Below are positions 3,901 through 6,107 of a stretch of DNA of 64,000 nucleotides, piece after piece (the stretch's first letter is position 1; every line of letters begins with the position of its first letter). Made by a program: the position numbers and the translations under genes. The stretch is taken from the NCBI RefSeq assembly GCF_006345805.1, contig NC_043012.1, forward strand, positions 57,040,001-57,104,000, read 5' to 3'. The DNA comes from Octopus sinensis (Eukaryota). A model generated the notes under the pieces. The model ran no database searches. It saw nothing but the letters and a program-made list of their open reading frames with translations, and was not told the DNA's origin.

Positions 3901-6107
3901 CAGCCACACAATTGCTTTCTTTTCAATAAATTCCCATTCACAGTGCTGGGAAGCTAATTTTTCTCTTAGTACAGCAACAACAAGAGCTGTAGCCCATACT
4001 TTATCACTAACAGATGGATTCTCATCGTTCAGATCCTTAAGAGAAATATTGAGAGCTTGAGCCAATTGATCATCTAGATTCCAGAAACCAGAGAAAGCTT
4101 GTAGATCAACCAAACCTGTTAAAATGTCCTTAATTGTTCCCTTTGAAGAGGTTAAGTCTGAGTGAGGTGACTGTCTTGAATTCTCAGCATTTATACTTAA
4201 GGAATTATTTATGGAAGCATACATTCCAGCTATATCTTCTCTCGGACGTACTGGCTTTGGCATAGAGTGTTGTAAAACTCTGTTGTAAAACTTACGGAAC
4301 ATTCTTACTATTGCAGGAACATTCTTACTACGAGAACGCGTGGCTTTAAATGTAAATGCCATAGTGACTGTTTGAATAGCATCTGGAACATGTTCATCCA
4401 AACCAACAAAACTTGTGTACTTTGAAACTAAATTAGCCATTGTACCCAAATCGATAATCTCTGATTTTATTTCATCACCTTTACCCAAATCTTCATTTAA
4501 TTCCAATTCCTGTATTTTCCTTTTCACACAAAGACGGTGTATTGTCATTTCCTTATTATTCTGTCCCAACAACCTTGCTTCAAAATCAAGTGAAAAGTCT
4601 GATTCACCAATTTTACCACAAAGATTCAATTTCACATTTTTGCAACTAGTCTCAGCTTCATGCAAAACTAGATAAAGGATTAATTTTTCTTCACTGAAAA
4701 TACATGGCAGCCTTTCTGGAACTGAAATAAAGGATAATTCTTTATTGTTTTCACCATGTTTAGCAGAGAGACAAACCGAAGATACAAATGGTTGCATTGA
4801 CAATTTTAATAAACGCATAACTTTTGCCTTAAGGTTGTCGTTTGTCATCACAAACTCTGCTTGTCCCTTCCCTGCGCGGGCAATACCTTTGACCAATTCT
4901 GTAGAAGCTCCAGAACCAATACCAATTGTGAAGTATCGTGTGTTGTTTACTTGTGACTTGACCAATTGAATGACATCGTTTGTGCTGTAGACTTCACCAT
5001 CAGTTATTAAGAATACTTGTCGATGGAAATTTTGAAATGGTTTTTTGTCAGAGAGTGATTTCAGTGCACTAAGAATTTCTGTTCCTCCTGAAGCATATAG
5101 ATTTTTCTGGAATTTCAATGCTTCATTCAGAGAATCTTCACTATATTCTTGGCTTCCTTCTTTGAACAGAAATTCAAAATCATTATTGAAGCTGATAGCA
5201 TTAAATGAGCAACCCAAAGGTAAACTTTTTAAGAAAAGTAACAAGGTATCTTTTGCTGCTTCAATTTTCTCTCCACTCATGCTTCCTGAGCAATCAATAA
5301 CAAAAATATAGTCATTAGCGGCAGATTGTTTTACTTGCGGAAGTTCTGGAAACACATTTATCATCATAATATCTTTAGAAAACATTCCTTTAGAATTCTC
5401 ATCTCCTTTCTCTAAAATTACTTGTGGTTTTTCTACATCTTCATAGTACACTTGCAGAAGAAGGTCTTTCTCAAAATTGAATTCCTTTGCCATTCTCACA
5501 GTAGCATGACACTTGTTATCCTGATATTCCACCTTAACTGGATGTTCTGATTTGATGTCTTTGATTTGTGAATTCCAGTTGACGGAGGCATTGAAACTAA
5601 ACTCTTTTGGTTTAGGTGCATTTTGATAATTTTCATCTGCAGGTTTAAGACCATATCTGGGATTAAGCACAAATGGCATATGAAATTTCACTGCCCCATC
5701 AACTTCACAAGAAAGTTCAGAAACAAGGCATATTTGTAAATGGATCTTTTCATTTGCTGGAATATTACCTAAACTATACTCAAAAATATCACCAGATGTA
5801 CTTGTCTCTCGCAACAAAATGGCAGACTGACCTTTATCTACAGCTTCTTTGTATTCCTTTTTGGCAACATCTTTGTCTTTAGATTTGGCAACTAAATGGA
5901 CATCACCAATTTTAGCTTCGAATTTATATACGGCACTGTCTTCTTCCACAGGGAAAACAAACTTAGCTTCTGTTTTGTGTTGGCTTTCATTTATATATTC
6001 AGCCTCGATGTTGACGTGTGATGTAAATCCATTAATGGAAATTGTATGTGTGGCATAGAGAAGAGAAACCTTTGTTTTATTTTCACAGATGATTCCAAAT
6101 ACCATTA
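913..6107. repeat. Segmental duplication copy 1 (VWA5A block)
   Basis: Co-linear near-identity with 17529-23692, seen directly and in identical translated ORF pairs (e.g. 3238-3438 = 20847-21047). Confidence 0.95.
2263..2999. mobile_element. Fold-back/MITE-like element with ~250 bp inverted arms and internal TTAGGG-like tract; second copy ~19905-20608
   Basis: 2280-2340 (AAAATAATTTTTTGTAACTAAACACTTTCAAACTTCGTATACTGGTAGAATGTGTCACA) is the reverse complement of ~2937-2996. GGGTTA/GGGTTTTA repeats at ~2560-2668. Confidence 0.6.

What the first reader, a model, noticed from the sequence alone, without database searches (positions are those of the whole stretch)
4131..4398. Swapped, non-homologous hypervariable cassette in otherwise near-identical VWA5A proteins
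Between YT(S/G)FVGL and DILT(G/C)LVDLQ the genes carry unrelated in-frame segments: 268 bp here and 244 bp at 21740-21983. Copy 1 is basic (KATRSRSKNVPAIVRMFRKFYNR). Copy 2 is Pro/acid-rich (SPPPQYLEEEFECMSFDSVDSSTDFVDSG). The C-terminal ~90 aa after the cassette are identical. A constant scaffold with an exchangeable exposed segment recalls the bait region of alpha-2-macroglobulin-type proteins or variable recognition modules. For a VIT-VWA protein this could be a diversified bait or specificity loop in a defence-related family (inference; no function is shown by the sequence).
Basis: partly seen in the sequence, partly recalled or inferred. Interest (0 to 1): 0.8.

Follow-up and report, generated by a model that had tools for sequence, protein, structure and literature searches.

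The report
Variable disordered tether in octopus VWA5A paralogues
Two neighbouring octopus VWA5A-like genes differ wholesale only in the floppy, unstructured loop that ties the protein body to its C-terminal domain; this loop is unconserved across the whole family, so the pattern looks like ordinary paralogue history and recombination, not a purpose-built variable "bait".

Summary
Two intronless VIT-VWA (VWA5A-like) genes of Octopus sinensis lie 17.6 kb apart. They are 96-98% identical over about 5 kb, except for an in-frame block with no detectable DNA similarity: 4150-4398 (83 codons, basic) against 21759-21983 (75 codons, acidic).

The block coincides with the only unstructured stretch of both AlphaFold models. 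This is the loop between the VITpt2 strand and the C-terminal helical domain, already described as a "long disordered loop" in Dictyostelium Vwa1 and human VWA5A. Across 63 family members this loop is 37-347 residues long and unconserved.

The two variants are not a swapped pair. O. sinensis and O. vulgaris carry a tandem array with at least four tether types, and these are re-assorted with two upstream classes and two 3' classes. Divergence rises towards the cassette on both sides.

Between species, orthologous cassettes are nearly unchanged (1/75; one indel in about 160; 4/83), which is roughly the neutral rate. Both cassettes carry slippage-type duplications.

No A2M-like features, silent donor copies or alternative exons were found. 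Secretion and any defence role were not tested. Verdict: old, diverged linker types kept in paralogues whose structured parts are homogenised. Low to moderate interest.

The parts
3817..6117 (-). Copy 1 (W1): intronless VWA5A-like CDS, 766 aa, with the basic (type B1) tether
   Evidence: ORF. Pfam VIT and VWA domains. The exact protein is annotated in O. sinensis on CM016874.1. AF2 mean pLDDT is 81.8.
4150..4398 (-). W1 tether cassette: 83 codons, residues 574-656, net charge +5, predicted disordered
   Evidence: Gap in the BLASTN alignment. No similarity to copy 2 above shuffles. pLDDT is below 50 for residues 577-661 with no secondary structure. The off-frame translation read has 9 stops (window span 4106-4423), while the coding frame is open.
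4268..4330 (-). Two perfect short duplications inside the W1 cassette: 12 nt x2 spaced 13 nt, and 15 nt x2 spaced 20 nt. The shifts sum to 33 nt, so the frame is restored.
   Evidence: the repeat finder. Type B2 relatives carry single copies (alignment).
4105..4567 (-). Wider island of raised W1-W2 divergence around the cassette (3-helix/VITpt2 region and first CTD codons)
   Evidence: Positions of differences.
3820..4149 (-). W1 C-terminal domain (CTD) helical bundle, 3' class I
   Evidence: AF2 helices at residues 665-765. Identical to copy 2 after the first 12 codons. CTD as described in PMC10539598.
21426..23702 (-). Copy 2 (W2): intronless VWA5A-like CDS, 758 aa, with the acidic (type A2) tether
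   Evidence: ORF. Pfam domains. Exact protein annotated. AF2 mean pLDDT is 82.6. The O. vulgaris orthologue differs at 5 of 758 residues.
21759..21983 (-). W2 tether cassette: 75 codons, residues 574-648, net charge -6, predicted disordered
   Evidence: pLDDT is below 50 for residues 577-654. Homologous to the P0005 cassette at about 80% identity with indels.
21819..21880 (-). Three copies of a 21-nt in-frame repeat encoding (F/T)D(S/F)VDS(S/G/R)
   Evidence: TRF and the repeat finder.
913..6107 (.). Duplicated segment, copy 1 (gene plus about 2.9 kb downstream)
   Evidence: BLASTN. Downstream non-coding divergence is 0.99%, against dS 0.053 in the gene body.
17529..23692 (.). Duplicated segment, copy 2
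   Evidence: BLASTN.

Best explanation
The 'cassette' is the intrinsically disordered tether that links the VIT/hybrid/VWA body, ending at the VITpt2 beta-strand, to the about 100-residue helical C-terminal domain. This is a standard but sequence-unconstrained element of the intracellular VWA5A/BCSC-1 family.

In the O. sinensis / O. vulgaris lineage the gene is an intronless tandem array next to a plexin gene. Array members carry several old, mutually diverged tether types: basic B1 and B2, and acidic A1 and A2. The structured parts are kept 97-99% alike by gene conversion, unequal crossing-over or recent duplication. These processes stop at the linker because no homology is left there.

Copy 2 combines an A2-type body and tether with a 3' end and downstream flank of the W1/Sb kind. 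Hence the flanks are near-identical around an unalignable core.

Within the tether, slippage and template-switch duplications, in-frame repeats and compensated frameshifts generate new peptide sequence. Selection appears to keep only an open frame, an approximate length, and perhaps composition.

Shown: the anatomy, the predicted disorder, the multiple types, the mosaicism and the conservation of orthologues.

Inferred: homogenisation as the cause of flank similarity, and the tether's role as a flexible leash for CTD docking on the VWA domain (the autoinhibition model of PMC10539598).
For: - AF2 models of both proteins are confident everywhere except residues 577-661 (W1) and 577-654 (W2). These stretches match the cassettes, which lie between strand 568-573 and the CTD helices.
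- PMC10539598 describes the same 'long disordered loop' between VITpt2 and the CTD in DdVwa1 and HsVWA5A.
- The top Foldseek hit is ITIH1, 6FPY.
- In 63 homologues the loop is 37-347 aa long, has net charge -24 to +12, and its column conservation is 0.29 against 0.53 for the body.
- At least 11 array copies in two species fall into types B1, B2, A1 and A2. One copy (P0006) carries a B2-type N-terminal module in tandem with a full A1 cassette.
- Upstream class, tether type and 3' class occur in nearly all combinations.
- In the 1.7-kb body, 177 of 496 site pairs fail the four-gamete test and Rmin is 12.
- The body is 97.3-99.4% identical among all copies, but the 3' ends fall into two classes about 8% apart.
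- W1-W2 differences pile up next to the cassette. The downstream flank is 0.99% diverged, against a body dS of 0.053.
- Orthologous cassettes are stable between species: W2 versus P0127 1/75; P0136 versus P0005 one indel in about 160; W1 versus P0122 4/83.
- Slippage marks are present in both cassettes, and P0005 has an internal duplication of about 190 bp.
Against: - No DNA or cross-frame similarity links the core of the basic type to the acidic types. Its origin is therefore unexplained, and a non-homologous replacement cannot be excluded.
- In W1 versus its closest relatives, changes are enriched in the first 20 residues of the cassette and all are non-synonymous: 6 substitutions in 124 bp against about 0.6% elsewhere, with Fisher p = 0.001-0.02 at the protein level. 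This could also reflect selection.
- Orthology was inferred from similarity in an array that recombines.
- Disorder is predicted, not measured.
- No expression data were available.
Confidence: 0.72

Rival explanations
1. The tether is a diversified bait or specificity module of an expanded defence-related family. It is kept different between paralogues by diversifying selection, while the scaffold stays constant.
For: - Lineage-specific tandem expansion with at least four tether types, all in frame.
- Opposite charge classes.
- Clustered, exclusively non-synonymous differences in the first about 20 cassette residues among B1 copies.
- The segment is exposed.
Against: - No Pfam A2M, thioester or MG domains were found, and the fold is ITIH1-like.
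- The family is described as nucleocytoplasmic. The N-terminus forms part of the VIT sandwich rather than a leader (by inspection; no signal-peptide predictor was run).
- The same loop is equally unconserved in single-copy VWA5A genes of vertebrates and protists.
- Orthologous cassettes are almost unchanged between species.
- No paper links VWA5A to octopus or cephalopod immunity.
Confidence: 0.1
2. Recent duplication followed by non-homologous replacement. The array is young. In one lineage the ancestral acidic tether DNA was physically replaced by an insertion/deletion, a template-switch event or captured foreign DNA, creating the basic type de novo. Flank similarity then simply reflects youth, with no homogenisation needed.
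For: - The acidic type resembles the tethers of Argonauta and other phyla (Cys/Met/Pro-rich N-terminal half, acidic/aromatic C-terminal half). The basic type was seen only in O. sinensis and O. vulgaris.
- The basic core matches nothing.
- Local duplications within it show template-switch activity.
- Body dS is only about 0.05.
Against: - This view does not explain the re-assortment of upstream, cassette and 3' classes, or the four-gamete failures.
- It does not explain the gradient of divergence towards the cassette.
- It does not explain the 8% divergence between 3' classes beside a 1-2.5% diverged body.
- No donor sequence was found in the window or the loci.
Confidence: 0.2
3. Assembly or annotation artefact, or one copy is a dead gene whose linker has decayed.
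For: - The O. sinensis assembly places other array copies on an unplaced contig that may be a haplotig.
- Some RefSeq models in the array look chimeric or are flagged 'low quality'.
- One O. vulgaris copy (Vc) is a pseudogene.
Against: - Both cassettes recur in an independent O. vulgaris chromosome assembly at about 99% protein identity (P0122, P0127).
- Both ORFs are intact over 758-766 codons, with dN/dS 0.34 in the body.
- The one alternative frame that was translated across the cassettes is full of stops.
Confidence: 0.03

Closest known systems
VWA5A/BCSC-1 clade of intracellular VIT-vWFA proteins (human VWA5A; Dictyostelium Vwa1-5; PMC10539598)
   Same: Same domain order: VIT, Hyb1a, vWFA, Hyb1b, 3-helix bundle, VITpt2, a long disordered loop, then a helical CTD of about 100 aa. 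Lineage-specific amplification is also reported for Dictyostelium.
   Different: Here the gene is intronless and tandemly arrayed. Paralogues are 97-99% identical outside the loop, so the loop is the only large difference. A basic loop type lacking the usual Cys/Met-rich and acidic composition has arisen.
Inter-alpha-trypsin inhibitor heavy chains (ITIH1, PDB 6FPY)
   Same: Best structural match for the VIT/hybrid/VWA body.
   Different: ITIHs are secreted, lack the CTD, and are cleaved C-terminally for linkage to hyaluronan. The octopus proteins have the VWA5A-type CTD and no evident leader.
Bait region of alpha-2-macroglobulin / insect TEPs (for example Drosophila Tep2 alternative bait exons)
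   Same: A flexible, exposed, highly variable segment in an otherwise conserved protein, varied between paralogues. This is an analogy only, recalled from general knowledge.
   Different: No MG domains, thioester or secretion signal. The variation comes from paralogue history, not alternative exons. Orthologues are conserved.
Concerted evolution of tandem gene arrays, where conversion tracts end at non-homologous islands
   Same: Homogenised flanks, mosaic copies, four-gamete failures, and divergence rising towards an unalignable core.
   Different: Conversion was not shown directly. Part of the similarity may be due to recent duplication.

Membership tests
VWA5A/BCSC-1-type VIT-vWFA protein | N-terminal VIT domain | tested here: met
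   PF08487, E = 5e-28 and 1e-27.
VWA5A/BCSC-1-type VIT-vWFA protein | vWFA domain with MIDAS residues (DxSxS ... T ... D) | tested here: met
   PF13768 and PF00092 match. D275, S277, S279, T346 and D373 are invariant in 63 homologues. The motif is DCSGS in W1 and DRSGS in W2.
VWA5A/BCSC-1-type VIT-vWFA protein | ITIH1-like arrangement of the VIT sandwich, hybrid domain, VWA, 3-helix bundle and returning VITpt2 strand | tested here: met
   Foldseek match to 6FPY, E = 7e-32. AF2 helices at 525-560 and strand at 568-573.
VWA5A/BCSC-1-type VIT-vWFA protein | Conserved helical CTD of about 100 aa joined by a long disordered loop | tested here: met
   Helices 665-765 have pLDDT of about 90 and the loop 577-661 has pLDDT of 30-40. 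W2 gives the same pattern. Described in PMC10539598.
VWA5A/BCSC-1-type VIT-vWFA protein | Intracellular location (no signal peptide) | tested here: inconclusive
   No predictor was available. The N-terminus aligns with the start of the VIT domain of homologues, and residues from about 17 onward form the first beta-strand.
alpha-2-macroglobulin / TEP bait-region proteins | Macroglobulin domains, thioester motif, A2M receptor-binding domain | tested here: not met
   No such Pfam families at E <= 0.01. Foldseek matches are VWA-containing proteins only.
alpha-2-macroglobulin / TEP bait-region proteins | Protease-sensitive bait whose cleavage triggers trapping | not testable with these tools
   Needs biochemistry.
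Programmed cassette diversification (silent donor copies, template/variable repeat pairs, or mutually exclusive exons) | Extra donor copies of the variable segment near the gene, or alternative exons with splice sites | tested here: not met
   No second copy of either cassette in 64 kb at word size 7. Each gene is a single uninterrupted ORF. The reverse transcriptase between the copies has the EEP-RT domains of an ordinary non-LTR retrotransposon.
Tandem array under concerted evolution / gene conversion | Mosaic copies: incongruent similarity of adjacent segments and four-gamete failures | tested here: met
   (177 of 496 incompatible pairs, Rmin 12). All four combinations of upstream class and 3' class occur.
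Tandem array under concerted evolution / gene conversion | Paralogues within a species more alike than orthologues between species | tested here: not met
   Orthologous pairs are 99.2-99.4% identical, against 97.3-99.1% for paralogues, in the 5' CDS. Homogenisation is therefore partial or older than the species split, or the array is simply young.

The most novel reading that the evidence does not exclude
The tether types are functional variants, not neutral ones. The ancestral acidic, aromatic and Cys/Met-rich tether may act as an intramolecular pseudo-ligand or regulatory motif, for example for the VWA MIDAS site or for CTD docking. The octopus-specific basic tether would then create a differently regulated or differently targeted paralogue. 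On this reading the array is a small repertoire of VIT-VWA proteins with distinct partner specificities, possibly in innate defence.
Probability: 0.1. Interest if true: 0.6.

Novelty: new member of a known kind. Interest (0 to 1): 0.25.

Why it matters
This is a clean natural example of how a disordered linker can differ completely between paralogues that are otherwise 97-99% identical. It shows how recombination in a tandem array stops at such an island.

It also documents an undescribed, intronless, tandemly expanded VWA5A-like family beside a plexin gene in octopus.

For VWA5A biology, which is poorly understood, the array offers natural tether-swap variants (basic versus acidic, 75-160 residues) for testing the proposed CTD-mediated autoinhibition.

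It does not, on present evidence, reveal a new diversification or immune-recognition system.

Tried and rejected
1. Frameshift origin. Six-frame translations of three basic cassettes were compared with six acidic cassettes. Nothing was significant after multiple testing, except the shared M1 module in P0006. DNA local alignments were no better than shuffles.
2. Donor copy in the window. None was found at word size 7.
3. Protein database search with the basic cassette alone. It returned nothing, not even the known positives P0001, P0002 and P0007, so it is uninformative rather than negative.
4. A proposed 'GAAnATGTTCC' recombination motif occurring three times in W1. The pattern search found it only once in W1. 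The shared core is only ATGTTCC, so I dropped the idea and kept only the exact 15-nt and 12-nt duplications.
5. Intron or alternative exon. Rejected, because both genes are single ORFs and the RefSeq proteins include the cassette.
6. Literature. There are no papers combining VWA5A with octopus. A broader search was noisy, and one search failed on syntax.
7. Bookkeeping error, corrected. The file L001.fa holds both L001 and L002, so the coordinates are mixed. supersede them.
8. Rfam and tRNA scans of the window found nothing.

Full report
**What is there.** The window is Octopus sinensis chromosome CM016874.1; window position x equals record position x + 57,040,000. Two uninterrupted ORFs lie on the minus strand. 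With the start codons used by homologues, they are CDS 3817-6117 (766 aa, "W1") and CDS 21426-23702 (758 aa, "W2"). Both exact proteins are already in NCBI. Pfam finds VIT plus VWA domains in both. [quoted passage not shown]

**The observation.**
- BLASTN aligns 913-6107 with 17529-23692 at 95-98% identity. This span includes about 2.9 kb of non-coding DNA downstream of each gene.
- There is a single break: 4150-4398 (249 bp) versus 21759-21983 (225 bp). Both are multiples of three and open in frame.
- The two blocks are no more alike than shuffled sequence: score 19 against 17.8 +/- 2.3. Neither block has another copy in the window.
- One block is basic (net +5, pI 10.3) and the other acidic (net -6, pI 4.3).
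- After DILT(G/C) the last 98 residues are identical.

**What the segment is.**
- AlphaFold2 models of both proteins, built with a 63-sequence alignment, are confident throughout (mean pLDDT 82, pTM 0.81). The exceptions are the first few residues and residues 577-661 (W1) or 577-654 (W2). These stretches have pLDDT 30-40 and no secondary structure.
- The cassettes are residues 574-656 and 574-648. They lie exactly between a beta-strand at 568-573 and the first helix of a C-terminal helical bundle.
- The body matches the crystal structure of ITIH1 (6FPY, E = 7e-32).
- A 2023 study of Dictyostelium Vwa1 (PMC10539598) lays out the family architecture: VIT, Hyb1a, vWFA, Hyb1b, 3-helix bundle, VITpt2 and CTD. 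[quoted passage not shown]
- The cassette is that loop.
- In my 63-sequence alignment the loop ranges from 37 to 347 residues, with net charge from -24 to +12. Its column conservation is 0.29, against 0.53 for the body and 0.46 for the CTD.

**More than two variants.**
- Fetching the loci of the closest homologues showed a tandem array. O. vulgaris chromosome OX597828.1 carries at least six or seven copies between 19.30 and 19.40 Mb. An unplaced O. sinensis contig of the same assembly as the window carries at least four.
- mixed two loci because one file held both records. Searches give the correct coordinates.
- The tethers fall into four types:
  - basic B1: W1, P0007, P0122;
  - basic B2: two intact copies and one pseudogene;
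  - acidic A1: P0003, P0004;
  - acidic A2: W2, P0005, P0136, and the C-terminal part of P0127.
- P0006 carries a B2-type N-terminal module in tandem with a complete A1 cassette, each starting (D/K)(E/K)HV.
- The acidic types share a conserved end (…DSVDSxC…F…V.D.ESFMSS..T) that is also recognisable in Argonauta. Their composition recurs in amphioxus, vertebrates and protists: a Cys/Met/Pro-rich first half and an acidic/aromatic second half. The acidic state is therefore probably ancestral and the basic one derived.
- The basic core has no detectable relation to the acidic types in any frame.

**How the pattern arose.**
- The 1.7-kb 5' CDS is 97.3-99.4% identical among all nine full copies of both species. 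The 3' CDS plus UTR falls into two classes about 8% apart, and there are two upstream classes.
- These classes combine freely with tether type. B2 occurs with both upstream classes and both 3' classes. A1 occurs with both upstream classes. A2 occurs with both 3' classes.
- Within the 5' CDS, 177 of 496 pairs of informative sites fail the four-gamete test (Rmin 12).
- Between W1 and W2, body dS is 0.053 and dN/dS is 0.34. The 2.1 kb downstream is only 0.99% diverged.
- Differences pile up beside the cassette: 13 within 200 bp upstream, 7 within 45 bp downstream, and 2 in the next 515 bp.
- W2's downstream flank continues like that of the W1-type copy on the unplaced contig.
- The simplest reading is that W2 is a recombinant. 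It has an A2-type body and tether joined, at the tether/CTD boundary, to a W1-type 3' end. More generally, conversion and unequal exchange homogenise the structured parts and stop at the unalignable linker.
- Orthologues are slightly more alike than paralogues. Homogenisation is therefore partial or old, and youth of the array may contribute.

**Rate of change.** True orthologues between O. sinensis and O. vulgaris have nearly the same cassette.

| Comparison | Changes in cassette | Changes elsewhere |
|---|---|---|
| W2 vs C-terminal part of P0127 | 1 of 75 | 4 of 683 |
| P0136 vs P0005 | one Pro indel in about 160 | 4 elsewhere |
| W1 vs P0122 | 4 of 83 | 4 of 475 (Fisher p = 0.02) |

- Pooled, this is about 1.9% in the cassette against 0.65% elsewhere.
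- By my own estimate, about 1.9% is roughly what about 1% neutral nucleotide divergence would give in unconstrained coding sequence.
- One hint points the other way. Among B1 copies the changes cluster in the first 20 cassette residues and are all non-synonymous (6 substitutions in 124 bp against about 0.6% elsewhere). Several of the variant residues match B2-type copies, which suggests micro-conversion.

**Mutational marks.**
- W1's cassette has two perfect duplications: 15 nt spaced 20 nt apart and 12 nt spaced 13 nt apart. Their frame shifts sum to 33 nt, so the frame is restored.
- W2's cassette has three copies of a 21-nt in-frame repeat.
- P0005 has a 36-bp indel and an internal duplication of about 190 bp relative to W2.
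- The coding frame is open. The one alternative frame that was translated holds about nine stops. Read-through to the CTD is therefore maintained.

**Comparison with known systems.**
- Membership of the VWA5A/BCSC-1 clade is met on domains, MIDAS residues, fold, CTD and disordered loop. Intracellular location is inferred only.
- The bait-region analogy fails on every structural criterion tested: no A2M, MG or thioester features were found.
- There are no silent donor cassettes or alternative exons. The reverse transcriptase between the copies has the EEP-RT domains of a non-LTR retrotransposon.

**Verdict.** This is a real and tidy pattern with an ordinary cause. It is the family's unconstrained disordered tether, present as several old types in a recombining tandem array. 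A functional meaning of tether type (charge-swapped regulation or partner choice) is not excluded, but nothing found here supports it.

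Noticed in passing
window 8951-12915 (minus strand): An apparently intact non-LTR retrotransposon lies between the two VWA5A-like genes. It has a 380-aa ORF1-like protein with long poly-Q tracts (11773-12915) and a 921-aa endonuclease/reverse-transcriptase ORF (8951-11716; Pfam Exo_endo_phos plus RVT_1).
   Followed up: partly
window 15401-16474: A satellite of about 25 tandem copies of a 43-bp unit, 97-98% identical, lies downstream of copy 2. The flanking sequence is shared with the O. 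sinensis unplaced contig and with O. vulgaris.
   Followed up: no
window 62764-62609, 61070-60924, 52844-52770, 27665-27609 (minus strand): The last exons of a plexin gene lie upstream of copy 2 on the same strand. The O. vulgaris annotation fuses plexin with the copy-2 orthologue into one 2617-aa model (P0127, CAI9733728.1). As a result, the protein database clusters copy 2 with plexins.
   Followed up: partly
L001 10001-14072 (O. sinensis VCDQ01002883.1): The RefSeq model XP_036356115.1 (P0001) spans a complete 764-aa ORF (10001-12295) and a partial second copy (13275-14072), and does not translate colinearly. It is probably a chimeric model or an assembly problem. This unplaced contig may be a haplotig of the window region with a different copy arrangement.
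   Followed up: partly
window 23703-23774: Copy 2 has an in-frame upstream ATG 24 codons before the conserved start (MQHVY...). The same upstream peptide is spliced onto plexin in the O. vulgaris fused model.
   Followed up: no
alignment A4, linker columns: Across animals and protists the otherwise unalignable linker repeatedly shows Cys/Met/Ala/Pro-rich runs (for example CAAPM-like) in its first half and acidic/aromatic/Cys runs in its second half. This suggests conservation of composition or of short motifs. The W1 basic type has lost it (no Cys).
   Followed up: no
Foldseek hit 9e5c_4s: A protein of the Trypanosoma brucei flagellar doublet-microtubule 96-nm repeat matches the whole VIT-VWA model (TM 0.5, E = 2e-27). 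This hints that intracellular VIT-VWA proteins can be structural axoneme components.
   Followed up: no
window 33080-34986, 47188-50173, 59724-60248, 63370-63621: A repeat unit of about 224-250 bp occurs both in short tandem runs and dispersed through the plexin introns (60-86% identity). It was not classified.
   Followed up: no
window 5290-5292 region (W1 residue 276): W1 and its B1-type relatives have Cys in the MIDAS motif (DCSGS), where almost all other array copies have Arg (DRSGS).
   Followed up: no
all cephalopod copies: The octopus VWA5A-like genes are single-exon. My recollection, not tested here, is that vertebrate VWA5A is multi-exon. This suggests origin from a retrocopy before the tandem expansion.
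   Followed up: no
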